From positions 194,860 to 258,859 of IMG/VR virus record IMGVR_UViG_3300032562_000003: a DNA stretch of 64,000 nt. One strand, written 5' to 3'. The notes beneath the pieces are model-generated. The model was not told the origin of the DNA. It worked only from the letters and a program-made list of their open reading frames with translations, and did not search any database. Both the position numbers and the translations under genes were made by a program. The first letter of the stretch is position 1; every line of letters starts with the position of its first letter. This document shows, in pieces, positions 10,608 through 54,979 of the stretch.

Positions 10608-11186
10608 ATGAAAATCAAAGATGTACTGAACGAAGGAATGACGTTTAATCCTGTAGTAGAAAAATCTTTTACTAAAGGGGAACATGCCGGCGAAACGTAT
10701 TGGACTGGTTCTGATTGGGAACGCAAAGAGAAACACGAATGTCCTGACTGCAAAGGTACAGGCAAGGGAACATATTCAAACGGCGAATTTCCTTGCGTAT
10801 TCTGCGGCGGCAAAGGGTACGAAGAGGAAACTTTTTCAGATGCGCCGGAGCTTTCGGTCAGTAACGCCAATGGTAAAATTATTCAAGAAATGTTAGGTTT
10901 GGATCCGGATTATTCAGGTGTCATTCATAATAAAGACTTATCTAACATAATGCGTCGATTGATACTGCTTAAAAACAAAGGTGCTCAGCAGTACACCAGA
11001 GAGCCTAAACAAGAACGTGGCCCGACACATCAATGGACAGATGACCATGGAATCACACATATAGGTCGCGGCCCAACGATGCACGACTATGGCCTCAGTC
11101 AAGATCAGATTAATAAGTACGTGGACAGACTCATTCAGATTATTCAATTCGCACAAAAAAACAATGCGAGTTTGGGCTGGGGTTGA
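10608..11186 (+). CDS. Hypothetical protein with DnaJ-type CxxCxGxG zinc finger; putative head protein
   Basis: CPDCKGTG...CVFCGGKG. N-terminus MKIKDVLNE-G. Confidence 0.6.
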   Translation: MKIKDVLNEGMTFNPVVEKSFTKGEHAGETYWTGSDWERKEKHECPDCKGTGKGTYSNGEFPCVFCGGKGYEEETFSDAPELSVSNANGKIIQEMLGLDPDYSGVIHNKDLSNIMRRLILLKNKGAQQYTREPKQERGPTHQWTDDHGITHIGRGPTMHDYGLSQDQINKYVDRLIQIIQFAQKNNASLGWG

Positions 11187-11217
11187 CATTTACCCAAATG
11201 CTTATTAATGTGCGGAC

Positions 11218-11487
11218 ATGATTACATTTCTAGACTCCATCGAAGCGCAGACTGTCCTAGTCGATCTAACTAAACAACTCAACCGACTTCCTTATAATTC
11301 CGACTTGCACAGGTTACATATTAATCTGTATGGTCTGATTTCAGAACTAAGCAAACTTGAGGTGTATGCAAGGAGAACCGGCCCCCGCTCTCGTTGGACT
11401 ATCGCACGTAATAAGAAGAAGGCGGAGATCCAAACTGCCATGTCCTACTTAGCTCAATTGCTACTCATTGCGCAGTTGATGGCTTGA
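11218..11487 (+). CDS. Hypothetical protein
   Basis: 89-aa ORF filling the intergenic space, with TTGACA at 11183 upstream. Confidence 0.5.
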   Translation: MITFLDSIEAQTVLVDLTKQLNRLPYNSDLHRLHINLYGLISELSKLEVYARRTGPRSRWTIARNKKKAEIQTAMSYLAQLLLIAQLMA

Positions 11488-11510
11488 AACATTCAGAAAC
11501 AAAAAAGCGG

Positions 11511-11539
11511 TTGACTTAGCTTTCTAGCTGCGTTATTTT
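11511..11539 (+). promoter_or_regulatory. sigma70-like promoter
   Basis: TTGACT, 17-nt spacer, TATTTT upstream of the MoxR gene. Confidence 0.55.
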
Positions 11540-11610
11540 TAATCATAGATTGACCAACAGGAAACAAATCTCAATCTCGTTTTTTAACAAACTTAAGGAG
11601 CTATATAAAC

Positions 11611-12711
11611 ATGTCTCGTGATATTGACACTCACACGATTACTTCTACTCAGGCCCGAAAGGCCATCCTCACTGCTTTCAAGGCAAAGCGTCCTGTCTTC
11701 CTCTGGGGTCCTCCGGGCATCGGCAAGTCGGAAGTCGTTCAGGAAATCACTGACGAACTCGGTGGTATCATGTTTGATCTGCGTATGGCGCAGATGGAAC
11801 CTACTGACATTCGCGGTATTCCCTTCTACAATAAGTACATCGGCAAGATGGATTGGGCTGAGCCCGTCGATCTGCCCAGTCAAGAAGTCGCCGATCAATA
11901 TCCGATCGTCGTTCTGTTCCTCGATGAAATGAACTCTGCTCCCCCTTCGGTGCAAGCTGCTGGCTATCAGCTGGTTCTGAACCGTCGAGTCGGTAAGTAC
12001 GTCCTCCCCGATAACGTCGTCATCGTTGCTGCTGGCAACCGTGACAGTGACAAGGGTGTCACGTATCGTATGCCCATGCCCCTTGCTAATCGCTTCGTTC
12101 ACCTCGAAATGAAGTATGATTTCGCTTCTTGGCAGATTTGGGCGGTCAACAAGAACATTCACAAGGACGTTGTCGGCTATCTGTCTTTCTCTAAGCAAGA
12201 CGGTTATGACTTCGACGCTAAGAGCTCCAGTCGAGCCTTCGCTACTCCTCGTTCTTGGACTTTCGTGAGCGATCTGCTCGTTGACGAACAAAACGTGGAT
12301 AACGATACTCTGTTCAATCTCGTTGCCGGCGCGATCGGTGATGGTCTCGCAACGAAGTTCATGGCTCACCGTCGAGTTGCTGGTCAGATGCCTGACCCGG
12401 CTGACATTCTTGAAGGTAGGGTCAAGGATCTTAAGGTCAAGGAAATCTCGGCTATGTACTCGTTGACGATCTCCATGTGCTATGAACTGAAGGACGCTCT
12501 CGAAAACAAGCGTGTGGACAACAAGAAGTTCCATGAAATGGGCAGCAACTTCATCGAATACATCATGAATAATTTCGAGACGGAACTGGTGGTCATGGGC
12601 GCTAAGATCGCCCTCAAGACTTACAAGCTGCCGCTTGAGCCCTCGCAACTGCGTAACTTTGATGAATTCTACAAGAAGTACGGCAAGTACATTGTAGAAG
12701 CTGGCAACTAA
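11611..12711 (+). CDS. MoxR-like AAA+ ATPase
   Basis: LWGPPGIGKS Walker A, LFLDEMN Walker B, AAGNR, LANRF. Adjacent to a vWA gene. Confidence 0.88.
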   Translation: MSRDIDTHTITSTQARKAILTAFKAKRPVFLWGPPGIGKSEVVQEITDELGGIMFDLRMAQMEPTDIRGIPFYNKYIGKMDWAEPVDLPSQEVADQYPIVVLFLDEMNSAPPSVQAAGYQLVLNRRVGKYVLPDNVVIVAAGNRDSDKGVTYRMPMPLANRFVHLEMKYDFASWQIWAVNKNIHKDVVGYLSFSKQDGYDFDAKSSSRAFATPRSWTFVSDLLVDEQNVDNDTLFNLVAGAIGDGLATKFMAHRRVAGQMPDPADILEGRVKDLKVKEISAMYSLTISMCYELKDALENKRVDNKKFHEMGSNFIEYIMNNFETELVVMGAKIALKTYKLPLEPSQLRNFDEFYKKYGKYIVEAGN

Positions 12712-12724
12712 GTCAGCGGCTCCT

Positions 12725-12758
12725 GGGGAGGGATTAGAGACAGTCCCTCCCCTTTTTT
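12725..12758 (+). terminator. Rho-independent terminator
   Basis: GGGGAGGGA/TCCCTCCCC stem followed by T6. Confidence 0.8.
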
Positions 12759-12826
12759 CTATTATCTATTGCATATCATGCCGCATTCTGTTATATTGTC
12801 TTATAACTTAATCAAAGGACACATTC

Positions 12827-14116
12827 ATGAGCGCCGTAATTACCCCTACTAAAAAGAGCAAGCGTACTCGCAGCAAGAAGTACGAAAATCTTATCGGTCC
12901 TATGGATCCTAAGATTGATGCTCAAGCCCGCGAACGTCTTGTTACGGCACGCATCGGTCTCCTTCTGCGTCATGCGTTTTTCGGCAACCTTGCTACTCGT
13001 CTTGCTCTTACTAATGCGGACGAATGGTGTCCGACTGCTGCGACCGACGGTCTGAGATTTTACTATAACTCTCGCTTCATCATGATGCTCAAGACGAAGG
13101 AAGTTGAATTCCTCGTTGGTCACGAAGTTCTGCACGTGGTCTACGATCACATGGGTCGTCGTGACAATCGTGATCCGGAAATCTGGAACATCGCTGATGA
13201 CTATGCAGTCAACGCAGACTTGAAGCGTCACCGCGTGGGCGAATTTATTACTACTGTGCCTTGCTTGTATGAGTCTAAGTACGAAAACTGGGCCGCAGAA
13301 GCCATCTACGATGACCTCATGAAGAATGTCAAGTACATCAATATTGAGGATCTCCTCGACAAGATGTTGGACGATCACGTTGACGGTGACGACGACGGCG
13401 ACGGCCGCGCAGGCGGCGACAAACCTGGCAAGGGCCGCCCCAAGCTTTCTCAGGAAGAAAAGGACCGCATTCGTCAAGAGGTCCGTCAAGCGGTAATCAA
13501 CGCTGCTTCTACGGCTGAGGCTGGCACTGTTCCGAAGGGCGTTGAACGCATGATCAAGCAACTGACTAGCCCGATCATGCCCTGGCGCGAATTGATCCAA
13601 ACTAATCTGACCTCTGCTATCAAGTCTGATTATACTTGGATGCGTCCTTCTCGTCGCAGCTGGCACATGGACGCTGTCATGCCCGGCATGAATCCTGGCG
13701 AAGAAATTGACGTTGACATTTATATCGACATGTCAGGTTCTATCTCGCAGAAGCAAGGTATGCAGTTTCTTTCGGAAGTTGCCGGCATGATGGATGCGTT
13801 CGATGGCTACAGCCTTCGGGTCTCGACATTCGACACTAAGGTCTATAACACTCAAGAATTTTCTTCTGAAAACATGGAAAACATTGAGGAGTATCAACTG
13901 TTCGGTGGCGGTGGCACTGACTTTGACTGCGTATTCGATGACCTTAAGGAAGCAGGACGAGTTCCGGCTCGTCTGATCGTCTTCACGGACGGGTATCCTT
14001 GCGGCAGCTGGGGCGATCAAAATTACTGTGATACGACTTGGATCATTCACGGTGACCCCGATCCTCACCCGCCCTTCGGTCAATGGGCCATTTATGATGA
14101 CCATCGCAAGTCCTAA
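12827..14116 (+). CDS. DUF2201-type putative metallopeptidase + vWA domain protein
   Basis: TAATDG, HEVLH (HExxH), MIDAS motif IDMSGS, TFDT, GGGGTDF and VFTDGY. Confidence 0.85.
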   Translation: MSAVITPTKKSKRTRSKKYENLIGPMDPKIDAQARERLVTARIGLLLRHAFFGNLATRLALTNADEWCPTAATDGLRFYYNSRFIMMLKTKEVEFLVGHEVLHVVYDHMGRRDNRDPEIWNIADDYAVNADLKRHRVGEFITTVPCLYESKYENWAAEAIYDDLMKNVKYINIEDLLDKMLDDHVDGDDDGDGRAGGDKPGKGRPKLSQEEKDRIRQEVRQAVINAASTAEAGTVPKGVERMIKQLTSPIMPWRELIQTNLTSAIKSDYTWMRPSRRSWHMDAVMPGMNPGEEIDVDIYIDMSGSISQKQGMQFLSEVAGMMDAFDGYSLRVSTFDTKVYNTQEFSSENMENIEEYQLFGGGGTDFDCVFDDLKEAGRVPARLIVFTDGYPCGSWGDQNYCDTTWIIHGDPDPHPPFGQWAIYDDHRKS

Positions 14117-14398: not shown

Positions 14399-14636
14399 CG
14401 ACATTAACATAAATCAGTGGTTCATGGACCGAGAATTAAGTCATACCCCTGAACATTTTATAAGATCAAGCACTCCTTTTACTATCGAGTCGCGCATGTG
14501 GATTTTGGAAAGCCTTCAAGGCAGATTTTCTACACATTACCCCAACACATCGACCTATATTATGAATAGAATAGCACTTTGTCCATCGTTTGAAGATCCA
14601 CAAGAAGCAGTGTTTTACGAACTCAAGTGGGGCTAG
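14385..14636 (+). CDS. Small hypothetical protein, FxxExDxxxFxL[RK]W-like family
   Basis: GTG start. C-terminus FEDPQEAVFYELKWG. Confidence 0.6.
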   Translation: MKTIDDININQWFMDRELSHTPEHFIRSSTPFTIESRMWILESLQGRFSTHYPNTSTYIMNRIALCPSFEDPQEAVFYELKWG

Positions 14637-15267
14637 GTCTTACTAGTTCCCACCCTCCAGTAGCGTTAAGTCCTTTGTTATTTACAATACGACTAATTGC
14701 ACCGGACTTGAGATTATAACATGTCCTTAATTGATAATTCGTCATTGATACTACCTCCCCGGTCATACGATTTTTCCAAGTTCTAACAGTATGGTCATAC
14801 TGCGGATGTTTTTCTTTTTTCTTGGGGTCATTAACAAAATGATGAGTCCCGGCAGCAAGTCTGTTTAATTGTCGTTTACTGGCAGCTTCCCTGTCCAACC
14901 AATTATGTGTTCCATTAAGAATGCGGTCTCTGTTTAGTTGCGCTTGGTGCTTGTTGGGCCCAACCCAAGGATGCTTGCCCGTTTTAACTAGCTTGTTAGC
15001 ATTTTTTGTTGCGAGGGCTACTAGCTCATCGGGAAGTAAGTTGATCCTACTTGACATTTTTACACAAGCTGCCCAATCACCCTGTGAATAATGAATGTTG
15101 TAATGTTCTTGTATAGATACACATTTCAAGTTAGCAGGATTATTATTGGAATGATTTCCGTCTATATGATGTATTTCATATGACCGACCCGACTCTTCCT
15201 TAGGAATTGGACCGTAGTGATGTTCATAGATATTACGGTACTTGTTTGTACCACAATAAATACACAT
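14623..15267 (-). CDS. HNH homing endonuclease, paralog of 4509-5171
   Basis: YGPIPKEESGRSYEIHHIDGNHSNNNPANL, three G[TK]H[HNP][FW] repeats and a different C-terminal region. Inserted antisense to its neighbours. Confidence 0.88.
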   Translation of the reverse strand: MCIYCGTNKYRNIYEHHYGPIPKEESGRSYEIHHIDGNHSNNNPANLKCVSIQEHYNIHYSQGDWAACVKMSSRINLLPDELVALATKNANKLVKTGKHPWVGPNKHQAQLNRDRILNGTHNWLDREAASKRQLNRLAAGTHHFVNDPKKKEKHPQYDHTVRTWKNRMTGEVVSMTNYQLRTCYNLKSGAISRIVNNKGLNATGGWELVRPSPT

Positions 15268-20462: not shown

Positions 20463-20492
20463 TTTATTCAACAAAGTATAAATAAAGTTGTT

Positions 20493-20960
20493 ATGCTTTG
20501 GTTGCTTTCTTTTTTTCCGGGTCTTTTGATTCACCTGCTCTTGTTAGCAGGAGGCCTTGCCCTTTTGGTTTCCTATTTTCTCGGACCTATACCTTTTGTA
20601 AAGCAATATACTATTCCAATTCGTGTTTTAGGATACGTTCTAGTGTGTTTTGGTTTGTACTACGAAGGTGGACTGTCATACAAAAAAGACTTAGATTTAC
20701 GTACAGCAAAAGTAGAAACTAAGATTGCAGTGGCTGCTGAAAAAAGCGCCAGCACAAACACTCAAATTCAAAATAAAGTGGACGCCGCCGAAAAGATCAT
20801 TCACGAAAAGGGTGATGATATCATTAAATATATCGACAGAGAAGTTGTGAAGTATGATAATGCATGTGTAATTCCGCAAGAGGTAATTAAAGCACACAAT
20901 ATAGCAGCAACTATCAATGCTGAGGCGACCGAAGCACCATCTTCTGGAGCACCGCAATGA
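20493..20960 (+). CDS. Putative inner-membrane spanin (Rz-like)
   Basis: N-terminal hydrophobic helices then a coiled coil, overlapping a downstream lipoprotein gene. Confidence 0.65.
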   Translation: MLWLLSFFPGLLIHLLLLAGGLALLVSYFLGPIPFVKQYTIPIRVLGYVLVCFGLYYEGGLSYKKDLDLRTAKVETKIAVAAEKSASTNTQIQNKVDAAEKIIHEKGDDIIKYIDREVVKYDNACVIPQEVIKAHNIAATINAEATEAPSSGAPQ

Positions 20961-21223
20961 AACCACTAATAATAACATTGCTCGCAGTAATGTTAACTGG
21001 ATGTGCAACCGTAGTTGCTGCACCTAAATTTCCAGATAGGCCACCTGCGCTTTCTAAAGATTGCGAAGAACTATCATTGTTAGCGGAAAACGCTAAACTT
21101 AGTGATCTTTTAAAAGTGGTAACTGAAAATTATGTCAAGTATCATATCTGTAAAAACCAAAACAAGGCTTGGAATAGCTGGTATGACGAACAAAAAAAGA
21201 TATATCAATCTGCTATCAAGTAA
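20957..21223 (+). CDS. Putative outer-membrane spanin lipoprotein (Rz1-like)
   Basis: Lipobox MLTG-C, proline-rich segment PKFPDRPP and a second Cys. Confidence 0.7.
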   Translation: MKPLIITLLAVMLTGCATVVAAPKFPDRPPALSKDCEELSLLAENAKLSDLLKVVTENYVKYHICKNQNKAWNSWYDEQKKIYQSAIK

Positions 21224-21275
21224 GTAGAATTGTAACTTCCGTTAGATAAATACTTAATAACAACGGAAGGTCTCT

Positions 21276-21833
21276 ATGAGTACGACACCTCAATACAGTC
21301 AAGAAATTATTAATATTGGCGCAGCACCTAATGACCAACAAGGTGATCCGTTACGTGTTGCATTCAGTAAGATCAACAATAATTTCTCAACTCTGTTTCA
21401 GACCTTTGTAAATTCAACTATATCATATACATCCGGTAATGTTCCAGGACAAGTAATATTTGAGACACCGGTCTCTACGTTTACTGAGGGACAATTCTAC
21501 ATCAAGTCATACAATGACGGAACACCAGACAGCCAGACAATTCAGCTATATGCACAAGTTAACGATGGCGGTAATGCAGTAAAATTTACTGGATATGGAT
21601 CGACCTTTTTTGGAAACAGCGTATCACTCTATGACATGATTGTTGATTCGGGTAGCGGAAATGTACAAATACTGTCCAATCCTCTACTGTCAGCGGACTT
21701 AACACACTTCATTTCTTCTCAAATTATGTGGGTTGGTCCAAATGTTCCGGGTGCATATATCTCCACAGAAAACTCCTTAAATTCGTCTCTGGCTACTGAA
21801 ACAGTAGTAGACATCACCACAGAGCAACCGTAA
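21276..21833 (+). CDS. Virion structural protein with T4 gp9/gp10-like N-terminal motif
   Basis: IINIGAAPNDQQGDPLRVAFSKINNNF. TAAATA at 21247. Confidence 0.6.
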   Translation: MSTTPQYSQEIINIGAAPNDQQGDPLRVAFSKINNNFSTLFQTFVNSTISYTSGNVPGQVIFETPVSTFTEGQFYIKSYNDGTPDSQTIQLYAQVNDGGNAVKFTGYGSTFFGNSVSLYDMIVDSGSGNVQILSNPLLSADLTHFISSQIMWVGPNVPGAYISTENSLNSSLATETVVDITTEQP

Positions 21834-22258
21834 TGAGAGCTTGGGAGTTTATAGTAGAAAGCGCACAGCCGTTACTTCCGGAACAACCAGGCTCTCCTAC
21901 ACCACCGGAAACTAAACTTTTACCAGACCAATTTGATGCTTTACCTGCAACGTATACTATACCAGGATTACCTAATCAGGATCCCTATCTACAGTATAGA
22001 TTTGGTGTAGCTATTGCTGGAGCCAAAGGTGCTTCTGCCCGCAGGGATGACGGAGTAAGCAGCATGACTCGTGAAAGTCCTTTCGGCGAGGGTGAGATAG
22101 TAGTTAGTTATGGTCATGATGCTGGACCATACATTGATGACGCACTAAAACAAATGGGACTGCGAGGCAAAAAGATGATTAGCAGCCCTACTAGTATTGA
22201 AACTAAGGATGTTGATAAAAGCAGTCCATTGAAGGCATTTAAAGGATACAAGAGATGA
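21833..22258 (+). CDS. Hypothetical putative head protein (paralog A)
   Basis: MRAWEFIVE-S; DPYLQYRFGVAIAGA; ends SPLKAFKGYKR. Confidence 0.65.
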   Translation: MRAWEFIVESAQPLLPEQPGSPTPPETKLLPDQFDALPATYTIPGLPNQDPYLQYRFGVAIAGAKGASARRDDGVSSMTRESPFGEGEIVVSYGHDAGPYIDDALKQMGLRGKKMISSPTSIETKDVDKSSPLKAFKGYKR

Positions 22259-22638
22259 GAGCGCACGAATTTATTACTGAATCTGACACACCTGCAAACC
22301 CTAAGGCATTTGCTGATGGTCAAATGGATGCTATCAAGGGCGCGATCAGCATGCCGGATATAAGCATCAATAAGTCAAACGGTAATCCTTATCTGGCTTG
22401 GCGTTTTGGTATTGCGATGGCCGGAGCTCCGGATTATCCAACTCCGCCGGTTGGTCCGATGGCAGGCGACCCTCTACTTTCTACCTACACTGATGTTGAA
22501 CTAGAAATAATCAATGTTGCTGCTAAAACAGTTGGTGCGGGCAGAGTAAAGAAACTGAGTGATAATCGTAGTACAGAGCTATCTAACACTCAAAAGAATA
22601 GCCCAATTAAAGCATTTAAGGGCTATAAGAAAAAATAA
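22255..22638 (+). CDS. Hypothetical putative head protein (paralog B)
   Basis: MRAHEFITE-S; NPYLAWRFGIAMAGA; ends SPIKAFKGYKKK. Confidence 0.65.
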   Translation: MRAHEFITESDTPANPKAFADGQMDAIKGAISMPDISINKSNGNPYLAWRFGIAMAGAPDYPTPPVGPMAGDPLLSTYTDVELEIINVAAKTVGAGRVKKLSDNRSTELSNTQKNSPIKAFKGYKKK

Positions 22639-23990: not shown

Positions 23991-23991
23991 C

Positions 23992-24270: not shown

Positions 24271-24291
24271 TATATTATACTAAATAATATC

Positions 24292-25839
24292 ATGAGCAAT
24301 CAACCAACACTAATAAAAGATCCATATAAGAAGACGGTCTTCAAGAATAAAAAAGAACTTGAGGACTTCATGAAGTGTTGTGATCCTGAAACCGGATATC
24401 TATACTTTATGGATAACTTTTTCTACATTCAACATCCTACTAAAGGTAGTATGTTATATCACCCGTGGCCTTATCAAGAAAGATTGATAGAAACATACCA
24501 CAAGTATAGATTCTCTATATCGCTAATGCCTAGACAGTCAGGTAAGTCAACATCCGCTGCTGGTTACCTACTTTGGTATGCAATGTTCGTTCCTGACTCT
24601 ACGATTCTTATTGCAGCACACAAATATACTGGTGCACAAGAAATCATGCAGAGAATAAGGTATGCGTATGAAAACTGTCCAGATCACATAAAGGCAGGAG
24701 TCACTACATACAATAAGGGCTCTTTAGATTTTGAAAACGGTTCTCGTATTGTATCCGCCACTACTACTGAAAACACCGGTCGTGGTATGTCTATCACGCT
24801 GCTATATCTTGACGAATTTGCGTTCGTTAGACCTAGCATTGCTAAAGAATTTTGGACATCCATTACTCCTACGCTAGCAACTGGTGGTAAGGCAATCATC
24901 ACGTCAACGCCAAACTCAGACGAAGACCAATTCGCGTTGATTTGGAAGGGTGCAAATAAAACGGAAGATGAGTTCGGTAATACGACTGAGTTAGGTGTAA
25001 ACGGATTCAGAGCATATCGAGCTTATTGGAAAGAGCAGCCAGGAAGAGATGAGAAATGGGCAAACGAGATCCGCGCCCAGTTAGGTGATGATCGTTTTGG
25101 TCGAGAAATAGATTGTAACTTCATCATTGCGGATGAAACCTTAATAAATCCAAATACACTGTTGATGTTAGATGGCATAGAACCTATAACTAGAATGGGA
25201 CAAGTTCGCTGGTATAAGACACCAGAAAAGGGAAAGTTGTATGTAGTTGCATTGGACCCCTCATTGGGTACTGGTGGAGATCCGGCTGCTATGCAAATAT
25301 TTGAAGCCAGTACGACTACTCAAATAGGTGAGTGGAAGCATAACAAAACTGATATTCCCAGTCAGATTAAGCTAATGGCACAGATCACCAAATACATAGC
25401 TGAATGCACTGGTGAGCCCAACAACATTTATTATTCTGTGGAAAATAACTCTATTGGTGAAGCGTCATTGATCTCACTGGCAGAATACGGAGAAGCCAAC
25501 ATTCAGGGTACGTTTATCAGTGAACCAGGTAAGAAACGTAAAGGATTCAACACTAGCCAAAAGCCCAAATTAGCAGCGTGTGCAAAATTCAAGACACTGT
25601 TAGAATCAAAAAAGATGACAATATATAGCCGATCGCTGATCAGCGAACTTAAGGCTTTTGTCGCAAACGGGGGCAGTTATGCTGCTAAGATCGGCGATAC
25701 CGATGATTTAGTTATGTCATCCCTGTTAGCAGTTAGAATGATGCAACAACTAGCGGATTTTCATGGTGATCTGGAATCTCAAATTCGTGACCATGACGAG
25801 TTTGTTGCTCCGCTTCCATTCTTTGCAATCTTTGGCTAA
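24292..25839 (+). CDS. terL: Terminase large subunit (T4 gp17-like)
   Basis: MPRQSGKS Walker A, LYLDEFAF Walker B, ITSTPN, nuclease ALDPSLGTGGD and DDLVMS. Confidence 0.95.
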   Translation: MSNQPTLIKDPYKKTVFKNKKELEDFMKCCDPETGYLYFMDNFFYIQHPTKGSMLYHPWPYQERLIETYHKYRFSISLMPRQSGKSTSAAGYLLWYAMFVPDSTILIAAHKYTGAQEIMQRIRYAYENCPDHIKAGVTTYNKGSLDFENGSRIVSATTTENTGRGMSITLLYLDEFAFVRPSIAKEFWTSITPTLATGGKAIITSTPNSDEDQFALIWKGANKTEDEFGNTTELGVNGFRAYRAYWKEQPGRDEKWANEIRAQLGDDRFGREIDCNFIIADETLINPNTLLMLDGIEPITRMGQVRWYKTPEKGKLYVVALDPSLGTGGDPAAMQIFEASTTTQIGEWKHNKTDIPSQIKLMAQITKYIAECTGEPNNIYYSVENNSIGEASLISLAEYGEANIQGTFISEPGKKRKGFNTSQKPKLAACAKFKTLLESKKMTIYSRSLISELKAFVANGGSYAAKIGDTDDLVMSSLLAVRMMQQLADFHGDLESQIRDHDEFVAPLPFFAIFG

Positions 25840-25857
25840 GTTGGCATAAATATCATT

Positions 25858-37865: not shown

Positions 37866-38786
37866 ATGAAAATTACATATGAACAATGGAAAGATCGGTT
37901 AAACAAGCGACTAGCAGAACATAACCAACAGGTAAGGGTCGTTACTTTTGGAAAATCAACACTAGAATTATCAACCGGCGAGATATTAATACAGCCCGAG
38001 TTTAATAATTTTAAAAAGAGGGTAATGAATTCCAAGACTGATCTTTGGGTGAAGAATATGGATTTGCTTCTATCCGGATTAATATCTGATCGGGAAGTCA
38101 AGGCTAAGCTTGCTGCAATTGGTGGCGAAGCCGTTCATAAATTACATCCTGAACTTAGTAGTCGCAATTTAAATACAGGTGTGCCGTGGAATAAAGGGAA
38201 AACAGGACTACAAACTTCTTGGGCGAAGGGTTTGACTAAACAAACCGACAGTCGGGTTGCTGCTAGAGTAAATAGCGGGGAAGCAAACGGTATGTATGGT
38301 GTAAAAATGTCTGACCAGGATAAAAAATTCCGATCGGATATAATGAAGGATAAAATTTTATATGGAGACTTTACCCCAAATTCCAACAATAGAAACACGC
38401 ACTGGGAAGCAACGTTTAACAGAAAGAAATATAGATCGAGTTGGGAAGCGTTGTTTCAGTATATGTATCAGGATGCAGCGTATGAAACATTGAGATTAGA
38501 ATACATTATCAACGGTAATCGAAAAATATACATAGTTGATTTTGTTGATTATAAAACCAAACAGGTAGTAGAAGTGAAGCCGACGGAGTTATGCCGAGGT
38601 AAGATATTTGACGCAAAAATGGTTGCCCTTAAAGAGTGGGCAGATCAAAATGGGTTTAGTGTCATTGTCGCAACACGGGAATGGCTATTGAATAATAGCT
38701 GCCCTTCCGACCTCTCTGGATTTGATGAAAAAACCGCAACAAAGATAAGGAAGTTATATGAAGCTAATAAGAAAAACCGAAATTGA
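37866..38786 (+). CDS. Free-standing endonuclease: NUMOD3-like motifs + TnsA-like PD-(D/E)XK domain
   Basis: PWNKGKTG and NGMYGVKMS motifs; YRSSWE...YIVDF...VVEVKP. AGGAG RBS before 37866 and TAAATA at 37836. Confidence 0.78.
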   Translation: MKITYEQWKDRLNKRLAEHNQQVRVVTFGKSTLELSTGEILIQPEFNNFKKRVMNSKTDLWVKNMDLLLSGLISDREVKAKLAAIGGEAVHKLHPELSSRNLNTGVPWNKGKTGLQTSWAKGLTKQTDSRVAARVNSGEANGMYGVKMSDQDKKFRSDIMKDKILYGDFTPNSNNRNTHWEATFNRKKYRSSWEALFQYMYQDAAYETLRLEYIINGNRKIYIVDFVDYKTKQVVEVKPTELCRGKIFDAKMVALKEWADQNGFSVIVATREWLLNNSCPSDLSGFDEKTATKIRKLYEANKKNRN

Positions 38787-38862
38787 TAAACCTGACGAAG
38801 TGTTCAATCTCCACATTGAAAATGATCATAATTACATAGTTGACGGTGCAGTAGTATCCAAC
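38758..38862 (+). other. Split intein C-fragment (35 aa)
   Basis: MKLIRKTEIDKPDEVFNLHIENDHNYIVDGAVVSN followed by Cys(+1). Block F VFNLHIENDHNY. Confidence 0.88.
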
Positions 38863-39594
38863 TGTCACATGGCAAAAGCTGATGTTCTCAAGCAAATGCT
38901 TACTGGGGTATTCGCTGATGTTCCTATTCGCTGGGGATTAACCGGTACCATACCTAAAGCCGAAATGGATCGCGCTTCGATTCTAGTATCTCTTGGGCCA
39001 GTCATCGGGAAGTTAGCAGCAAGTGAGCTACAAGATCGAGGTGTTCTTGCAAGTTGTCACGTTAACATAGTGCAGCTTAAAGATACTTCGGAGTTTACAA
39101 ACTATCAAAGCGAGTTAAAGTTTCTACTAGAGGACGGCCATCGTTTAGACAAAATCGCTGATCTTGTACGAGCCGTCAATAAAACAGGCAACACATTGGT
39201 TTTGGTTGATAGAGTAAATGCAGGTAAAGAACTAGTCAGCAGACTACAAAATTCAGTGTTTGTTAATGGTGGAACAAAACTAACAGAACGCAAAGAAGAA
39301 TACGATGAGGTTGCGATCAGTGATGATAAGATAATTGTAGCTACATATGGTGTTGCGGCTGTGGGCATCAACATTCCTCGAATCTTTAATTTGGTTCTCA
39401 TCGAACCAGGCAAATCATTTGTACGAGTTATACAGAGCATTGGTCGTGGCATAAGAAAAGCAGAAGACAAAGACCACGTGCAGATTTGGGACGTTACTAG
39501 TACGTGTAAGTTTGCAAAGAGGCATTTAACCCAGCGTAAGGCTTTTTATAAAGAGGCTAAATATCCCTTTACTATAGAGAAACTGGATTACTAA
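38758..39594 (+). CDS. uvsW: C-intein fused to UvsW-like helicase C-terminal part
   Basis: After SN: CHMAK, WGLTGT (motif III), VATYGVAAVGINIP and QSIGRGIR (motif VI). Confidence 0.9.
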   Translation: MKLIRKTEIDKPDEVFNLHIENDHNYIVDGAVVSNCHMAKADVLKQMLTGVFADVPIRWGLTGTIPKAEMDRASILVSLGPVIGKLAASELQDRGVLASCHVNIVQLKDTSEFTNYQSELKFLLEDGHRLDKIADLVRAVNKTGNTLVLVDRVNAGKELVSRLQNSVFVNGGTKLTERKEEYDEVAISDDKIIVATYGVAAVGINIPRIFNLVLIEPGKSFVRVIQSIGRGIRKAEDKDHVQIWDVTSTCKFAKRHLTQRKAFYKEAKYPFTIEKLDY

Positions 39595-50053: not shown

Positions 50054-50302
50054 ATGCAAAAGAAAACAAAAAGCCTTCTTGAGGAATTACAAGCATATGG
50101 TGAAAACCGTGATGTCAATCATATTATTGAGTCTCGGGCTTCCAATATTATTACCAGTGCTATCAATCTAATTGAATTGATGAATCGTAATTATTCTCCT
50201 GAAAAAGCAGAATTTCTTGAAAAGAAATTGCTTAGCGCTATCAAAGGTAAAGATCAAGCAAGATTTTCGAAGTCCATAAGGAGGAATCATGAAGATAAAT
50301 GA
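50054..50302 (+). CDS. Hypothetical protein
   Basis: 82-aa ORF after TAAATA near 50026. Confidence 0.6.
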   Translation: MQKKTKSLLEELQAYGENRDVNHIIESRASNIITSAINLIELMNRNYSPEKAEFLEKKLLSAIKGKDQARFSKSIRRNHEDK

Positions 50303-51626
50303 GTTTAATTCACCTAAGCAAGTAGATGAGGGTCTATTGAGCAACGTATTTGGAGATTACGGAGCATCTACTATTACGAATACACTCGGTAAGTACGCTG
50401 AGCCAATGATGAAACGGGCACAACAGAATTTAACCCAGAAAAACTTCATCAATAGCTTTCTTAAGAGTGCATCAACGGCTTTGGCTAATGTAGCTGCTCC
50501 TGCCACTAGGGTATCAGCAGCACCAGCTGCCCCGACAGGGTCTGCGGGTCCAACAGCAGCATCTTCTGCCCCGACAGGGTCTGCGGGTCCAACAGCAGCA
50601 TCTTCTGCCCCGACTGCTGCAACTGCAACTACACAAAATACAGCATCCACAGACCCTTATGAAAACCTTAAAGGACAAGTACGTAGTATTCAACCTACAC
50701 CAAATGCAAAGCCTCTTCCGGCTAATATGGTTGCAAGCTTGCAAGGAGATATGCAAAAATTAGCTAAGGGTGATAAGGAAAGTGGCGCCTTTGCTGCTAA
50801 TAAGATTTTAAAATTTGCAAATGCTGGATACGATGTCAGTAAGCTAGCACCAGCATGGACAGCAAGCAGCAAGGCAGGTGAAAGGTTCTTGACCCAGAGT
50901 GTATATCGCGCTATAAGTAAAATGCTTAAGGAACACGGACTGGTTTGGGCTAATCTAGGTCTTCGTATTAGGTTGACTGAAAGTGTTAAAGGATCTGGAG
51001 TCTTTATAAGCACTTGCAAGCCAGTTTCCGTCGTAGTCTCACCGTATGATAGATTAAATTACGTACTTGAAAGTATCATATCAGAATATGATCCTACTTT
51101 GGCTAGAACTACCGGCAATGCACCAAAACCAACTGCGCCTAAAGCGGTTAATACTCCTAGATTCGGCACAAAGCCTGCGTCATCGGCCGCCGCACCAAAG
51201 ACGGTAGCGCCACAGGCCGCCGCACCAAAGACGGTAGCGCCACAGGCCGCCGCACCAAAGACGGCGCCACCACAACCCGCTGCCCCTAAAGGAAAACCTT
51301 CTCAGATATTGAATAGCTGGTTTTATAACTATATGCACGGAGTAAACATTAATGATAACCAACAAAAGCTAATCAGTGATTTACTTAGCCAAGTAGATGC
51401 TACGTATAGCAAAGACAAGGGCAATGAAGCACTCCAAAAATTGGCATTATTAGCGTTCAAACTTACAGCCGCAGCTAAACCTGAATTAATAAAAAATACC
51501 CCATCTACATCAGGGTCACTCTCTACTTCTTCGGAACAAATAAAGGCCTCGTTGGACTCACTAAAAAACAAAAACCCAGCTGAATATAAAAAAATTATAG
51601 CAGACATTAATCAAACAGCACAATGA
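50289..51626 (+). CDS. Hypothetical putative head protein with Ala/Pro-rich tandem repeats
   Basis: MKINEF...VDE-G N-terminus and two in-frame repeat tracts. Confidence 0.65.
   Translation: MKINEFNSPKQVDEGLLSNVFGDYGASTITNTLGKYAEPMMKRAQQNLTQKNFINSFLKSASTALANVAAPATRVSAAPAAPTGSAGPTAASSAPTGSAGPTAASSAPTAATATTQNTASTDPYENLKGQVRSIQPTPNAKPLPANMVASLQGDMQKLAKGDKESGAFAANKILKFANAGYDVSKLAPAWTASSKAGERFLTQSVYRAISKMLKEHGLVWANLGLRIRLTESVKGSGVFISTCKPVSVVVSPYDRLNYVLESIISEYDPTLARTTGNAPKPTAPKAVNTPRFGTKPASSAAAPKTVAPQAAAPKTVAPQAAAPKTAPPQPAAPKGKPSQILNSWFYNYMHGVNINDNQQKLISDLLSQVDATYSKDKGNEALQKLALLAFKLTAAAKPELIKNTPSTSGSLSTSSEQIKASLDSLKNKNPAEYKKIIADINQTAQ
50527..50614 (+). repeat. In-frame 39-bp tandem repeat (2 copies + partial)
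   Basis: Unit CTGCCCCGACAGGGTCTGCGGGTCCAACAGCAGCATCTT (APTGSAGPTAASS). Confidence 0.9.
51185..51264 (+). repeat. In-frame 30-bp tandem repeat (2 copies + partial)
   Basis: Unit GGCCGCCGCACCAAAGACGGTAGCGCCACA (AAAPKTVAPQ). Confidence 0.9.
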
Positions 51627-52768
51627 GTGACCTCAGGGCCTTAATAGATAAACTGGAATCCATCAACACCGTAGTTGTTGAAGGCAAAGGTCATTTGGAT
51701 CATCCTGAAGATTTAGTTTTTTTAGGGGATGAGGAAGGTGCAAAACGCGCAATATCTGCAATAGAAGCAACTGTAAATCAACCAAACTCTATAACTATCA
51801 AATGGGACGGGTATCCTGCGCTTATATTCGGTCGAGGATCTGATGGAAAATTCTCCATCATGGATAAGCACATGTTTAATAAAAAGGACGGCACTGGTAG
51901 AGCAGTATACAGTCCTGAACAATTTATGGAATATGATCGGGCCAGAGGAGTAGACAGAGGAAATCTATACCATCTGATTGGTACTATTTGGTCTGGTTTG
52001 GAAAAAGATGATCGCGGTGGAAATGGTTACTACTGGGGTGATCTTTTATTTAGCAGTCCACTTAAGGATGAAAATGGGGTATTCAAGTTTAGAGCCAATC
52101 CTAATGGAATTGCATATACAGTAGATGTAAACAGCGACGTTGGTAAACTACTAGCAGGAAAAGCCGCTGGTATTGCTGTCCACCAGTTTATACCGGCTCA
52201 GTCGGCGTCAACTGATGAGGCTGTTTCATTGAACGGATCATTGGGTAATCTACAAAATGCTTCTAATGTAGCTATAGTACCTAGTAAGATGCCGATTACA
52301 CCTAAATTAAAAATGCCAGCTAGACTCAAGAACGTAGCAGAAAGAGAACTACAGCAGTATGGACCATCAATCAAAGATTTGATGAATACTGCCCCTCAGG
52401 CTAGAAATACATTCAATCAACTTTTTACAGTTTACATCAACAAGAAAATTGTGTCAGGTAGTCTTACTAATTTAATAAAAGACTTTTTAGAGTATGTAAA
52501 AGCTAGACCTATGTCCGACGCCATGAAGCAAAAAATTCTAGAACATCTAGAAGTAAACAAAGAAGGCCTAGTAGGTGCCTTCAAAGTTTGGATATCATTG
52601 TACAATCTTAAAATGAATGTAGTGAAACAATTAGACGCATCAGCTACACATAGTCCCGTAAAGGGATATTTGCAGGATGGATCACAGACACATGAGGGTT
52701 TCGTCGCACAAGGTCTTAAGTTTGTTGATCGTATGGGATTTTCTCGTCAAAATCTTCAAGGCCGATAA
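51623..52768 (+). CDS. DUF6267-like protein with ATP-dependent ligase-type motifs
   Basis: HLDHPEDL, TIKWDGYPA (KxDG), HEGFVA and LKFVDR. Confidence 0.62.
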   Translation: MSDLRALIDKLESINTVVVEGKGHLDHPEDLVFLGDEEGAKRAISAIEATVNQPNSITIKWDGYPALIFGRGSDGKFSIMDKHMFNKKDGTGRAVYSPEQFMEYDRARGVDRGNLYHLIGTIWSGLEKDDRGGNGYYWGDLLFSSPLKDENGVFKFRANPNGIAYTVDVNSDVGKLLAGKAAGIAVHQFIPAQSASTDEAVSLNGSLGNLQNASNVAIVPSKMPITPKLKMPARLKNVAERELQQYGPSIKDLMNTAPQARNTFNQLFTVYINKKIVSGSLTNLIKDFLEYVKARPMSDAMKQKILEHLEVNKEGLVGAFKVWISLYNLKMNVVKQLDASATHSPVKGYLQDGSQTHEGFVAQGLKFVDRMGFSRQNLQGR

Positions 52769-53233: not shown

Positions 53234-53258
53234 TATAAAAAGTTATTATTAACTAACG

Positions 53259-53291
53259 AAGCCCGGAAATAATATTATTTCCGGGCTTTTT
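53259..53291 (+). terminator. Terminator from a perfect 30-bp palindrome
   Basis: AAGCCCGGAAATAAT-ATTATTTCCGGGCTT followed by TTT. Confidence 0.8.
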
Positions 53292-53309
53292 GTTGCTCTA
53301 AATAACACT

Positions 53310-53750
53310 ATGCATAGAATTCGGTGCTATACGTTATTTGACATCACCCAAACTGGAGTGATGAATCGTTCTAGACCGAATGTGGATGACATTGACGGTT
53401 GGCTACGTAAACGTAATACACAATGCAATTTCGATACAGTACTTCAGATTATATCTTTAAGATCGCAGCCTGAGGTAACTAAATTACCTACTAAAATAGA
53501 AATGAGTGAATCTGAATTTGAAAAATTTGGGTTTGCATATGAGATGCAAGATAAATTTAGTTACTGCTGGAGTTTCGAGTTTGAGATTCAACACACTAGC
53601 GTATTTGAAAATGGAATTGTACCGTTGGGATCATTGTACAGCGATTGTGACGGAGTACCGATGATAGTTTGCGGAGAACAGAATGTTCCCACTTCATCCT
53701 TTTTAAATACTACAGTAGAGTTAAAAAATATCTATTTTGAGATAATGTAA
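53310..53750 (+). CDS. Hypothetical protein
   Basis: 146-aa ORF after TAAATA at 53299. Confidence 0.65.
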   Translation: MHRIRCYTLFDITQTGVMNRSRPNVDDIDGWLRKRNTQCNFDTVLQIISLRSQPEVTKLPTKIEMSESEFEKFGFAYEMQDKFSYCWSFEFEIQHTSVFENGIVPLGSLYSDCDGVPMIVCGEQNVPTSSFLNTTVELKNIYFEIM

Positions 53751-53751
53751 T

Positions 53752-54240
53752 ATGAAAAATGTGGTAAAACTAGCTAAATTTTTTGACGAAGAATTGAATT
53801 CTAACCTCAGTGAAGTGTTAGTTACTAAATACCAATTTGGAGAATATGGTCTATTTGGTAAATATTTAGTTAAACTCACACCTGCAGGTTGGTATAAAGT
53901 AGTTGTATTAAAAAATAAAGACGCCCATGAGTTTACTACACTAAGAAATGCTGTTACCTGGTGTACATTGCAGCATGCTGATTTGGGAAAACAAGCAAGA
54001 AGGTTACAACAACTAGATGCAAAACTTAGTAGCTTGCAAGTAGAGATTACTCTACATAAAAATATGAGCAGAACATCAACCAATGTTTACACTAAACAAA
54101 TGTATAGAATGAAGTTACAGGAAGACACCTTTCAGAAAAAACAAGTAGTCAATGAAGTCAATTCTTTCATAAATAGTTCTATGATGATTCAGGCTCGTAA
54201 GTTTGACAAGTCAAAAGAACGTAAATTTACATACCGATGA
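53752..54240 (+). CDS. Hypothetical coiled-coil protein
   Basis: 162-aa ORF coupled to the previous gene. Confidence 0.6.
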   Translation: MKNVVKLAKFFDEELNSNLSEVLVTKYQFGEYGLFGKYLVKLTPAGWYKVVVLKNKDAHEFTTLRNAVTWCTLQHADLGKQARRLQQLDAKLSSLQVEITLHKNMSRTSTNVYTKQMYRMKLQEDTFQKKQVVNEVNSFINSSMMIQARKFDKSKERKFTYR

Positions 54241-54271
54241 TAAATATTACAATCAACAGGAAGATTAACTT

Positions 54272-54979
54272 ATGAAACTTAACGATTTAGACAAGAATAA
54301 CGTTGCTGAAAGAGCACTTAAGGAATCCTTTTCTATGAATTTTGACGTATCGAACTTAGACCGCGCAAAAACCCGTGCTATGTTAAAGAAGGTTACTGGT
54401 CTGATCAACGAATCAAGACGATCACCTAATTTTCATAAAGCACAGAACAATCCAACTTATTTGAAGTTGAAGTTTATGGAGCAGGCTCTAACTCAGCATT
54501 TACCTTATGCTAAGTCTCCTCGCATCGTATTTGAAAATGAAGAAGTAGAGAAGTCACAGGTCATTCTTGCTGCACAAGATATGGTTGACACTGTACAAAA
54601 GTACTATGAAGATGTCAATGATATGCTTGTTAAGGAACTTCCGGCACTGGTCGATTCGATTCAATCAGAAATTGGTGTCAACGAAAGCACACAATTCAAT
54701 CAGCAAGTGTCCGAAGCACTTACTACTCTCAATAGCACTCTACAAGAAACAAAGGCTGCGCTTCAAGGTGCGCTAGGCACACTCACTGGTCAAGGCGGCG
54801 AAGATGCATTTGCAACCAACGAACCTGAGCTTGGAGCTGACATGGGTGCAGAGTTAGGAGCCGACTTAGGTGGCGAACTTGGTGACGAAGAAGATTTAGA
54901 TATGGATCTCTCTGAACCAAAGTCTGATGAGGAAGAACTTCCACCTAGATTCAGCGGTGCAGGCCGCCCAAAGCGATAA
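54272..54979 (+). CDS. Hypothetical helical acidic protein (possible head scaffold/core)
   Basis: TAAATA at 54241; coiled coil and acidic tail with LGA[DE] repeats. Confidence 0.55.
   Translation: MKLNDLDKNNVAERALKESFSMNFDVSNLDRAKTRAMLKKVTGLINESRRSPNFHKAQNNPTYLKLKFMEQALTQHLPYAKSPRIVFENEEVEKSQVILAAQDMVDTVQKYYEDVNDMLVKELPALVDSIQSEIGVNESTQFNQQVSEALTTLNSTLQETKAALQGALGTLTGQGGEDAFATNEPELGADMGAELGADLGGELGDEEDLDMDLSEPKSDEEELPPRFSGAGRPKR

What the first reader, a model, noticed from the sequence alone, without database searches (positions are those of the whole stretch)
10608..54979. Multiple late genes begin with T4 capsid-targeting-like N-termini
Seen: MKIKDVLNE-G (10608), MRAWEFIVE-S (21833), MRAHEFITE-S (22255), MKINEF...VDE-G (50289) and MSDLRALIDKLE...VVVE-G (51623), with looser MDINEL (8597) and MKLNDL (54272). 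Established: T4 internal proteins carry a ~10-aa capsid-targeting sequence of the MKTY[QK]EFIAE type that is removed by gp21. Inference: this phage packages a sizeable set of uncharacterised internal proteins, which are good candidates for anti-defence factors and a possible cargo-loading tag.
Basis: partly seen in the sequence, partly recalled or inferred. Interest (0 to 1): 0.6.

Follow-up and report, generated by a model that had tools for sequence, protein, structure and literature searches.

The report
T4-like capsid-loading tag in a jumbo phage
A large uncultivated phage, and a whole clade of its relatives, starts many unrelated proteins with the same nine-residue tag, M-R/K-x-x-E-F/L-I/L-x-E, which closely matches the signal phage T4 uses to load proteins into its head, so the tag probably marks enzymes that are injected together with the DNA.

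Summary
The core motif is well above chance. Across the 259-kb genome, M[KR]xx[DE][FLIVM] starts 16 of 308 ORFs but follows only 4 of 1376 internal Met. The strict form M[RK]xxE[FL..][IL..]xE scores 9 against 0.

The window is the end of an uncultivated jumbo-phage contig that encodes a T4 gp21-type prohead protease (Peptidase_S77, catalytic His and Ser kept) and a gp23-like capsid protein.

The tag is portable. It sits on proteins with no other similarity, including a GH19 lysozyme, T7 0.7-like kinases, a methyltransferase and the DUF6267 ligase-like protein. In IMG/VR it heads at least 30 protein clusters. Five relatives (TerL 65-83% identical) each carry 4-10 copies and an S77 protease.

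Per gene:
- 21833 and 22255 are canonical.
- 10608 and 50289 are supported by their homologues.
- 51623 is supported indirectly.
- 8597 and 54272 are doubtful.

Most likely these are T4-type capsid-targeting propeptides cut after the Glu. No virion data exist, so packaging and cleavage remain inferred. This is a new member of a known kind, on an unusually large scale.

The parts
21833..22258 (+). 141-aa protein with the canonical tag MRAWEFIVE|S (tag = 21833-21859). First of a tandem pair of small, largely disordered proteins.
   Evidence: Its start overlaps the stop of the preceding ORF. It belongs to the largest tag-bearing family (70 of 172 clustered proteins).
22255..22638 (+). 127-aa paralogue with the canonical tag MRAHEFITE|S (tag = 22255-22281).
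   Evidence: There are 954 metagenomic homologues, and 118 of the best 120 carry M-R-A-x-E-F-[IVL]-x-E followed by A/S/T/G/N. The AF2 model is weak (pLDDT 71, pTM 0.36).
10608..11186 (+). 192-aa protein with the near-canonical tag MKIKDVLNE|G (10608-10634). It contains a CxxCxGxG-type cysteine motif.
   Evidence: Homologues at 64-65% identity start MKI[KT]ELLNE|G, which is the strict motif.
50289..51626 (+). 445-aa protein with a longer tag, MKINEFNSPKQVDE|G (50289-50330). It has the form of the 19-residue leader of T4 IPI.
   Evidence: Homologues at 34-51% identity keep MKI[DS]ELKNP(Q..)LNE|G while the following residues diverge. T4 ipI reads MKTFKEF...ITE|A.
51623..52768 (+). 381-aa DUF6267 protein (KxDG, ligase-like) with a non-canonical 20-aa N-terminal extension, MSDLRALIDKLESINTVVVE|G (51623-51682).
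   Evidence: The Pfam match starts at residue 24. Cyanophage and Vibrio-phage homologues start directly at the HLEHLED block. Eight IMG/VR homologues have MRAxEFLxE plus a variable linker in the same place.
8597..10606 (+). 669-aa multidomain protein (DUF5661, weak DUF6934) starting MDINEL. Doubtful as a tag carrier.
   Evidence: Close homologues keep MDI[NS]EL, but no Glu site follows. It clusters with tagged proteins only through shared internal domains. TAAATA lies 4 nt before the ATG.
54272..54979 (+). 235-aa protein starting MKLNDL. Its first ~25 residues are a conserved part of its own family and contain A-L-K-E|S. It does not carry the portable tag.
   Evidence: It gives a PHROG 'virion structural protein' match over residues 85-215. 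No cultured-phage tblastn hit.
50054..50302 (+). 82-aa ORF heading the 50054-52768 operon. Context only.
   Evidence: It matches phrog_11854 'virion structural protein' at E=5e-15. Its end overlaps the start of 50289.
24292..25839 (+). Large terminase. In all six related genomes the tagged 126-aa gene pair lies 1-4 kb from it.
20477..20484 (+). TATAAATA, the T4 late-promoter consensus, 8 nt before the first gene of the operon 20493-22638 that ends with the two canonical carriers.
   Evidence: The full octamer is not enriched in the window (2 found, about 6 expected), so this is suggestive only.

Best explanation
The N-terminal nonapeptide M-[RK]-[AVI]-x-E-[FL]-[ILV]-x-E, and a few longer variants that also end in hydrophobic-x-Glu, is this phage lineage's version of the T4 capsid targeting sequence.

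Proposed mechanism: the tag binds newly made cargo proteins to the scaffolding core while the prohead assembles. The gp21-type serine protease (Peptidase_S77, genome 129736-130398, outside the window) then cuts after the Glu, normally residue 9. The mature protein is left free inside the head and leaves with the DNA at infection.

Shown here:
- The motif is strongly enriched at N-termini.
- It is portable between unrelated proteins.
- It co-occurs with an intact S77 protease and a gp23-like capsid protein whose own leader holds L-x-E sites.
- The cargo includes enzymes of the kinds phages are known to inject.

Inferred: binding to the core, cleavage after Glu, presence in virions, and delivery into the host.

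Within the window this applies with good confidence to 21833, 22255, 10608 and 50289, and with moderate confidence to 51623. It probably does not apply to 8597 or 54272.
For: 1. Match to T4. In the T4 record, ipII and ipIII start MKTYQEFIAE|A and ipI starts MKTFKEF...ITE|A. One carrier here starts MRVTEFIAE|G, and the window pair start MRAWEFIVE|S and MRAHEFITE|S. The E-F-I-x-E core and the I/L-x-E cut site are the same. T4 gp21 specificity for I/LxE is stated in PMC12991175.

2. Protease. An S77 match of 89 bits is above the cut-off. It is 33% identical to T4 gp21, and the His85 and Ser140 equivalents (LGEVDHP, GVSSRG) are kept. The capsid protein is 35% identical to gp23 and has a ~45-aa leader containing LLE|S, LLE|G, LFE|N and LAE|S.

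3. Enrichment.

4. Portability. After removing the first 12-14 residues, carriers fall into many unrelated BLAST clusters: at least 5 for the strict set in this genome, and 42 overall including at least 30 from IMG/VR. All 156 IMG/VR pattern hits sit exactly at ORF starts.

5. The tag is an add-on. DUF6267 occurs untagged in cyanophages and tagged in this clade, with linkers of variable length. The SOD and NT5C domains start at residues 17-18.

6. The alignment of the GH19 carrier with Salicola phage SCTP-2 gp45 runs through the predicted cut site: VTEFIAE|GYKE against ITQYLFE|SYKD. The residues before it differ in length.

7. Clade-wide. Five contigs of 191-525 kb (TerL 65-83% identical) each have 4-10 pattern hits against 0-1 for the control, and all have an S77 protease.

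8. In an unbiased homologue sample, positions 1, 2, 3, 5, 6, 7 and 9 are essentially invariant, positions 4 and 8 are free, and P1' is small. Codons vary synonymously.

9. Cargo types fit injected proteins: GH19, lysozyme and LysM; T7 0.7-like kinases; an ADP-ribosyltransferase (as T4 Alt); GNATs; a methyltransferase; a sigma region-4 protein.

10. Four carriers lie just downstream of the protease-scaffold-capsid gene block (genome 123866-125848).
Against: - There is no proteomic, N-terminal or structural evidence. No cultured phage carries the main families.
- The protease-tag complex prediction gave no answer.
- A phage-encoded ClpP also co-occurs with the tag in 5 of 6 genomes, so co-occurrence alone does not single out the S77 protease.
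- Two IMG/VR carriers have a Tat signal straight after the tag, which fits awkwardly with head packaging.
- Some looser carriers (SOD, NT5C nucleotidase) are ordinary cytoplasmic enzymes.
- Cultured relatives with S77 proteases (PA5oct, GAP32, Vibrio 2.275.O) have 0-1 matches. The tag is therefore lineage-specific, not a general feature of S77 phages.
Confidence: 0.68

Rival explanations
1. The tag is an N-terminal degron or recognition signal for the phage's own Clp machinery (ClpP, ClpX, ClpA-like and ClpS-like genes are encoded). On this reading it times the destruction of early or toxic proteins and has nothing to do with loading them into heads.
For: ClpP is present in this genome and in 4 of 5 tag-rich relatives; the fifth is only 54% complete. 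ClpX-, ClpA- and ClpS-like N-termini are visible in the ORF list. ClpX is known to read short N-terminal motifs (own knowledge).
Against: T4 has the nearly identical tag and no ClpP. PA5oct has ClpP but only one pattern match. The motif ends in the I/L-x-E cut site of gp21-type proteases and is followed by small residues. Cargo such as peptidoglycan hydrolases, and the position of four carriers beside the head genes, fit packaging better.
Confidence: 0.08
2. The tag is cut by the prohead protease but is not a targeting signal. It would be a short pro-peptide that keeps enzymes inactive, or the proteins would reach the head by other means. The converse is also possible: it targets but is never removed.
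For: The sequence data show only a cut-site-like ending and N-terminal position. Targeting is inferred purely by analogy with T4.
Against: Nine residues are unlikely to inhibit dozens of unrelated folds. Residues 2-7 lie upstream of the P3-P1 site and are more conserved than cleavage alone would need. In T4 the equivalent peptide is sufficient for targeting (PMC3012670 and PMC5694885).
Confidence: 0.12
3. The similarities come from chance, general N-terminal composition (Lys/Arg at position 2, AT-rich early codons), or plain paralogy. No tag exists.
For: The loose '[LIVF]xE in the first 12 residues' criterion is only 1.6-fold enriched. Several carriers are paralogues. 8597 and 54272 look like family-specific N-termini.
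Against: The strict motif scores 9 against 0, and 10 against 1 as a DNA pattern. Cultured relatives have 0-2. The motif occurs on unrelated proteins and at the exact start of 156 of 156 IMG/VR hits.
Confidence: 0.05
4. The conserved element acts at the RNA level, as a translation-initiation or leaderless-mRNA signal, and not as a peptide.
For: About 20 genes have a TAAATA element 3-6 nt before the ATG, which suggests leaderless transcripts.
Against: Codons at the conserved positions vary synonymously: AGA/CGA/CGT, GCA/GCC/GCT/GCG, GAA/GAG, TTT/TTC, ATC/ATA/ATT/CTT/CTA. Most strict carriers are internal genes of operons with overlapping stop and start codons.
Confidence: 0.03

Closest known systems
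[quoted passage not shown]
   Same: Both are extreme N-terminal leaders of about 10 residues (19 in IPI) that start Met-basic, share the core E-F-I-x-E, and end in the I/L-x-E site of a gp21-type protease. Both are shared by otherwise unrelated proteins, and both phages have gp21, gp22-like and gp23 homologues.
   Different: This tag is 9 residues, not 10, with the consensus MRAxEF[ILV]xE or MKIxEL[LF]xE. About 18-22 candidate carriers occur in one genome, against 3 IPs plus Alt in T4. Many carriers are large enzymes (up to 756 aa), not small basic proteins. The host phage is an uncultivated jumbo phage whose terminase is at most 52% identical to that of any cultured phage. Function is untested here.
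T4 Alt, a packaged ADP-ribosyltransferase with a gp21-cleaved N-terminal propeptide
   Same: It is an enzyme cargo loaded through a short N-terminal propeptide and injected with the DNA (PMC5694885). One IMG/VR tag carrier has an ADP-ribosyltransferase exoenzyme domain.
   Different: No ART was seen in this genome. The enzyme cargo here is a kinase-like pair, a methyltransferase, GH19, the DUF6267 ligase-like protein and a sigma region-4 protein.
P1 DarB N-terminal packaging signal (PMC9024508)
   Same: An N-terminal peptide (30 residues in P1) is sufficient to send a large enzyme into the capsid for delivery into the next host.
   Different: There is no sequence similarity. In P1 the signal belongs to one stepwise Dar assembly pathway and is not a tag shared by many proteins.
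Propeptides of phiKZ and SPN3US head and ejection proteins (PMC5694885, PMC10052503)
   Same: These are jumbo phages with a gp21-related prohead protease that cuts after Glu and processes many inner-head proteins.
   Different: Their propeptides are mostly longer than 100 residues, protein-specific, and cut at a different motif. Here the leader is a short, shared, T4-style tag.

Membership tests
T4-type capsid targeting sequence (CTS) | Located at the extreme N-terminus, about 10-20 residues, starting Met-Lys/Arg | tested here: met
   All 156 IMG/VR pattern hits are ORF starts. 8597 (Asp at position 2) and 51623 (Ser at position 2) do not meet this.
T4-type capsid targeting sequence (CTS) | Ends in the gp21 cleavage motif I/L-x-Glu, followed by a small residue | tested here: met
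   IVE|S, ITE|S and LNE|G for 21833, 22255 and 10608. 50289 has VDE|G, and LNE|G in its homologues. P1' is A/S/T/G/N in 108 of 115 homologues. No such site occurs in 8597. 54272 has LKE|S at residues 16-18.
T4-type capsid targeting sequence (CTS) | Shared by proteins that are otherwise unrelated (portable module) | tested here: met
   BLAST clustering without the N-terminus. DUF6267 occurs with and without the extension. Pfam domains of carriers are diverse.
T4-type capsid targeting sequence (CTS) | The phage encodes a gp21-type prohead protease and a T4-type core and shell | tested here: met
   The same holds in 5 of 5 tag-rich relatives.
T4-type capsid targeting sequence (CTS) | The peptide is sufficient to direct a foreign protein into the prohead | not testable with these tools
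   Needs a fusion and encapsidation experiment. The complex prediction gave no verdict.
T4-type capsid targeting sequence (CTS) | Carriers are present in virions with the leader removed | not testable with these tools
   There is no cultured member and no proteome. Only neighbouring ORFs carry PHROG 'virion structural protein' labels.
Peptidase_S77 (T4 gp21 prohead protease) | Pfam score above the curated cut-off, with catalytic His85 and Ser140 conserved | tested here: met
   89 bits against a cut-off of 27. H in LGEVDHP and S in GVSSRG align with T4 H85 and S140.
DUF6267 (window 51623) | Pfam match over the whole domain | tested here: met
   127 bits against a cut-off of 27, residues 24-379. 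The KxDG-like IKWDG motif is visible in the sequence. Ligase activity is not tested.
ClpX/ClpA N-terminal degron | Recognition and degradation by Clp unfoldases | not testable with these tools
   Only co-occurrence could be examined. It is uninformative, or mildly against.
T4-type late genes | TATAAATA-like promoter upstream, with a gp55-like factor in the genome | tested here: inconclusive
   TAAATA lies 3-6 nt before the ATG of 19 genes, including TerL and 8597. TATAAATA precedes the 20493 operon. A gp55-like N-terminus was seen in ORF 145890 by eye only. Nothing was found upstream of 50054.

The most novel reading that the evidence does not exclude
The nonapeptide MRAxEF[ILV]xE is the address label of a large, fast-evolving arsenal of injected effectors, used by a widespread and wholly uncultivated clade of jumbo phages (191-525 kb). 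That arsenal covers dozens of families: kinases, ADP-ribosyl-, acetyl- and methyltransferases, peptidoglycan hydrolases, a sigma-like factor, a ligase-like enzyme, and a very abundant family of ~126-aa disordered proteins. If so, the tag lets injected phage proteins, a class rich in anti-defence and host-takeover factors, be read straight from metagenomes. It may also work as a cargo-loading tag interchangeable with the T4 one.
Probability: 0.5. Interest if true: 0.75.

Novelty: new member of a known kind. Interest (0 to 1): 0.6.

Why it matters
Proteins that travel inside the phage head are the first phage products to meet the host. In T4 and P1 they include dedicated inhibitors of restriction systems. 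They are hard to find because they share no fold and usually need virion mass spectrometry of a cultured phage.

Here a nine-residue tag picks out about 20 candidates in one genome and hundreds across metagenomes, many with enzyme domains, and no culturing is needed. Full literature-text searches for the capsid targeting sequence, for DUF6267 and for PA5oct with 'prohead protease' found no description of this tag or clade.

If the tag is confirmed, it gives a search key for injected effectors. It would also extend the T4 protein-packaging principle to jumbo phages, where only long, protein-specific propeptides had been described.

Tried and rejected
- Near-identity DNA search of the window against cultured phages found no match.
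- tblastn of 22255, 54272 and 50289 against 50,697 cultured phage records found no match. No MS-verified homologue could therefore be used.
- Complex prediction of the S77 protease with residues 1-40 of the GH19 carrier gave no answer (score 0.01). This is evidence neither for nor against binding.
- AlphaFold2 of the 126-aa family with 62 sequences gave pLDDT 71 and pTM 0.36, mostly coil with three short helices. It was too weak for a fold search, so none was run.
- The full T4 late-promoter octamer is not enriched in the window: 2 found, about 6 expected.
- The bare 'hydrophobic-x-Glu near the N-terminus' criterion was rejected as non-discriminating.
- T4 alt was not in the stretch I fetched. 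The statement that Alt is processed rests on PMC5694885.

Full report
**What the window is**

The 64-kb window is the last quarter of a 258,859-bp IMG/VR viral contig, estimated 73% complete. GC content is about 40% and nearly all genes lie on the plus strand.

The large terminase (24292-25839) is at most 50-52% identical to that of any cultured phage. The nearest are the jumbo phages PA5oct, Atu_ph07, Phosso and the Rak2-like group.

Outside the window the genome encodes:
- a T4 gp21-type prohead protease (Peptidase_S77, 89 bits, genome 129736-130398);
- a gp23-like major capsid protein (genome 127403-128599), with a scaffold-like gene between the two.

The protease is 33% identical to T4 gp21. 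It keeps the residues that align with catalytic His85 and Ser140 (residue numbers from PMC12991175). The capsid protein is 35% identical to gp23. Ahead of the region that aligns with mature gp23 it has a leader of about 45 residues containing LLE|S, LLE|G, LFE|N and LAE|S. A T4-style head maturation system that cuts after hydrophobic-x-Glu is therefore present.

**The observation**

All seven N-termini read as quoted. Outside the window the starts include:
- MRANEFIFE
- MRANEFLIE
- MRVTEFIAE
- MRVTEFLSE
- MRAREFISE
- MRAIEFLIE
- MKIQELLNE
- MKIQELFE
- MKIIELIE
- MRITELVE
- MKISDIYE

There are others as well.

Enrichment counts:
- Strict motif M[RK]xxE[FLIVY][FLIVY]xE: 9 of 308 ORFs against 0 of 1376 internal Met.
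- M[KR]xx[DE][FLIVM]: 16 against 4 (p=3e-9).
- A bare hydrophobic-x-Glu near the N-terminus: only 1.6-fold enriched, so not informative.
- As a DNA pattern: 10 matches against 1 for the reversed control. PA5oct, Atu_ph07, Phosso, Vibrio phage 2.275.O and GAP32 have 1, 1, 2, 0 and 0.

**Comparison with T4, tested and not recalled**

In the T4 record, ipII and ipIII start MKTYQEFIAE|A and ipI starts MKTFKEFTSTTTPVSTITE|A. The core E-F-I-x-E and the I/L-x-E ending are identical to MRVTEFIAE|G and to the window's MRAWEFIVE|S and MRAHEFITE|S. The longer IPI form parallels 50289, MKINEFNSPKQVDE|G.

**Portability**

I removed the first 12-14 residues and ran BLAST on what was left. The strict carriers of this genome then fall into at least five unrelated groups.

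Every match is the first codon of an ORF, and 155 of 156 read MRA. Together with this genome's candidates they form 42 single-linkage clusters.

Pfam domains among 68 IMG/VR carriers outside the 126-aa family:
- DUF6267 (7)
- GH19 (6)
- DUF6321 (3)
- GNAT acetyltransferases (3)
- DUF6934 (2)
- LysM (2)
- a phage lysozyme (1)
- an ADP-ribosyltransferase exoenzyme domain (1)
- a Tat signal (1)

Carriers in this genome:
- a 756-aa GH19 protein;
- two T7 gp0.7-like kinase-related proteins;
- a SAM methyltransferase;
- a sigma-70 region-4 protein;
- with looser tags, an Fe/Mn superoxide dismutase and an NT5C nucleotidase, whose domains begin at residues 17-18.

**The tag is an add-on**

DUF6267 proteins of cyanophages and of Vibrio phage 2.275.O start directly at the conserved HLEHLED block. 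Eight IMG/VR homologues have MRAxEFLxE plus a linker of 3-10 residues in front of that block. The window's 51623 has its own 20-residue extension there, ending VVVE|G.

The GH19 carrier aligns with gp45 of the cultured jumbo phage Salicola SCTP-2 straight through the predicted cut site: VTEFIAE|GYKE against ITQYLFE|SYKD. The residues upstream differ in number.

**Clade**

Five IMG/VR contigs of 191-525 kb reached through the tag have TerL 65-83% identical to the window's. Each has 4-10 pattern matches (controls 0-1). Each has an S77 protease, and each keeps the tagged ~126-aa genes (two adjacent copies in four contigs, one in the fifth) 1-4 kb from TerL, as in the window.

A homology search with 22255, which does not depend on the motif, found 954 metagenomic relatives. 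Of the best 120, 118 carry M-R-A-x-E-F-[IVL]-x-E. Positions 4 and 8 are free, and position 10 is A/S/T/G/N in 108 of 115. Codons at the fixed positions vary synonymously, so selection acts on the peptide.

**Verdict per gene in the window**

| Gene | Verdict | Basis |
|---|---|---|
| 21833, 22255 | Canonical | Strict motif |
| 10608 | Near-canonical | Homologues read MKIKELLNE\|G |
| 50289 | Supported | Long variant, kept as MKI[DS]ELKNP..LNE\|G at 34-51% identity |
| 51623 | Supported indirectly | N-terminal extension replaced by the tag in homologues |
| 8597 | Doubtful | Keeps MDI[NS]EL among close relatives but has no Glu site; linked to carriers only through internal domains |
| 54272 | Doubtful | Family-specific conserved first 25 residues with an A-L-K-E\|S site; PHROG 'virion structural protein' match. 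It may be a head protein, but it does not carry the portable tag |

**Timing**

TAAATA lies 3-6 nt before the ATG of 19 genes (10 at exactly 5 nt, against about 0.15 expected per position). These include TerL, the structural-protein-like ORF at 25858, and four looser carriers. The 8597 ATG has the element 4 nt upstream.

TATAAATA precedes the operon 20493-22638, and ATAAATA lies 25 nt before 54272. Nothing comparable precedes 50054-52768, which follows primase and helicase genes. 'Late' is therefore plausible for most candidates but not shown.

**Rivals**

A phage-encoded ClpP co-occurs with the tag in 5 of 6 genomes, so a Clp degron cannot be excluded by co-occurrence. Three points count against it. 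T4 has the tag without ClpP. PA5oct has ClpP with only one pattern match. The motif ends in a gp21-type site.

Chance, paralogy and RNA-level explanations are contradicted for the core set by the counts, the clustering and the synonymous variation.

Two IMG/VR carriers place a Tat signal straight after the tag. This remains unexplained.

**What is known, and novelty**

The following points are established:
- CTS-directed packaging in T4 (PMC3012670 and PMC5694885).
- The P1 DarB signal (PMC9024508).
- The phiKZ and SPN3US jumbo phages use long, protein-specific propeptides.

Full-text searches for the CTS, for DUF6267 and for PA5oct with 'prohead protease' found no description of this tag or clade.

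I file it as a new member of the T4-type CTS kind. Four defining features were tested and met. The two functional ones, sufficiency for targeting and removal in virions, cannot be tested here. What sets it apart is the number and the enzymatic nature of the carriers, and its spread through an uncultivated jumbo-phage clade.

Noticed in passing
Genome-wide; in the window e.g. 24278-24283 (before TerL), 8587-8592, 25844-25849, 53296-53301: A TAAATA element sits 3-6 nt upstream of the start codon of 19 genes (10 at exactly 5 nt, against about 0.15 expected per position). It looks like a T4-late-type promoter placed so close to the ATG that the transcripts would be leaderless or nearly so.
   Followed up: partly
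window 36813-39594 (+): A UvsW-like helicase is split into three ORFs. The first has ResIII/DEAD plus the N-terminal half of a HINT/intein domain. The second is a free-standing 313-aa ORF. The third starts with an intein C-terminal-like ...HNYIVDGAVVSNC motif followed by Helicase_C. This is the 'fractured gene' arrangement of a split intein with an intervening ORF.
   Followed up: partly
Outside the window: genome 36449-37039, 39206-39562, 40129-41325, 101818-104082 (all minus strand): The phage encodes its own Clp system. ClpP has a Pfam E-value of 5e-81. ClpX-, ClpS- and ClpA/B-like N-termini are visible by eye. ClpP is also present in 4 of 5 related jumbo contigs, in PA5oct and in SCTP-2.
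   Followed up: partly
window 21833-22638, alignment A1: The ~126-aa tagged family has a second invariant Glu (S-x-E, residue 108 of the 22255 protein) followed by a conserved basic tail, SP[VI]K.FKGYKK. This could be a second processing site or a DNA-binding tail. The proteins are predicted to be largely disordered.
   Followed up: no
IMG/VR loci L029:2992-3612 (+) and L074:3858-4493 (-): In two carriers the tag is followed at once by a twin-arginine (Tat) signal, MRAxEFxxE(I/M)DRRGFL.... If the tag is removed in the head, the delivered protein would present a Tat signal in the next host.
   Followed up: no
Outside the window: genome 86204-96456 (minus strand): A 10-kb same-strand 'cargo island' holds six tagged or tag-like genes (GH19 protein, kinase-like protein, unknowns). 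A Dps/ferritin-like ORF (90504-90947) lies among them.
   Followed up: no
window 4488-5171 (+), 14623-15267 (-); genome 131551-132186, 9490-10221, 30248-30910, 141975-142682: Several copies of two families of homing-endonuclease-like genes (HNH-like 'IYEQ..GPIPK..HHIDG' and 'MTIYLYKKTHN.TGL.YLGKT') are scattered through the genome. One lies between the capsid gene and the tagged genes next to it.
   Followed up: no
window 11611-14116 (+): A MoxR/AAA ATPase lies next to a DUF2201 metallopeptidase-like plus VWA protein. This region has the highest GC in the window (about 0.50).
   Followed up: no
window 51623-52768 and locus L142 (Methylophilales phage Melnitz-3, gene 16): The DUF6267 homologue of the T4-like phage Melnitz has its own short extension, ..INFSKYITE|D, ahead of the conserved block. 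Other T4-like lineages may therefore tag this enzyme too.
   Followed up: no
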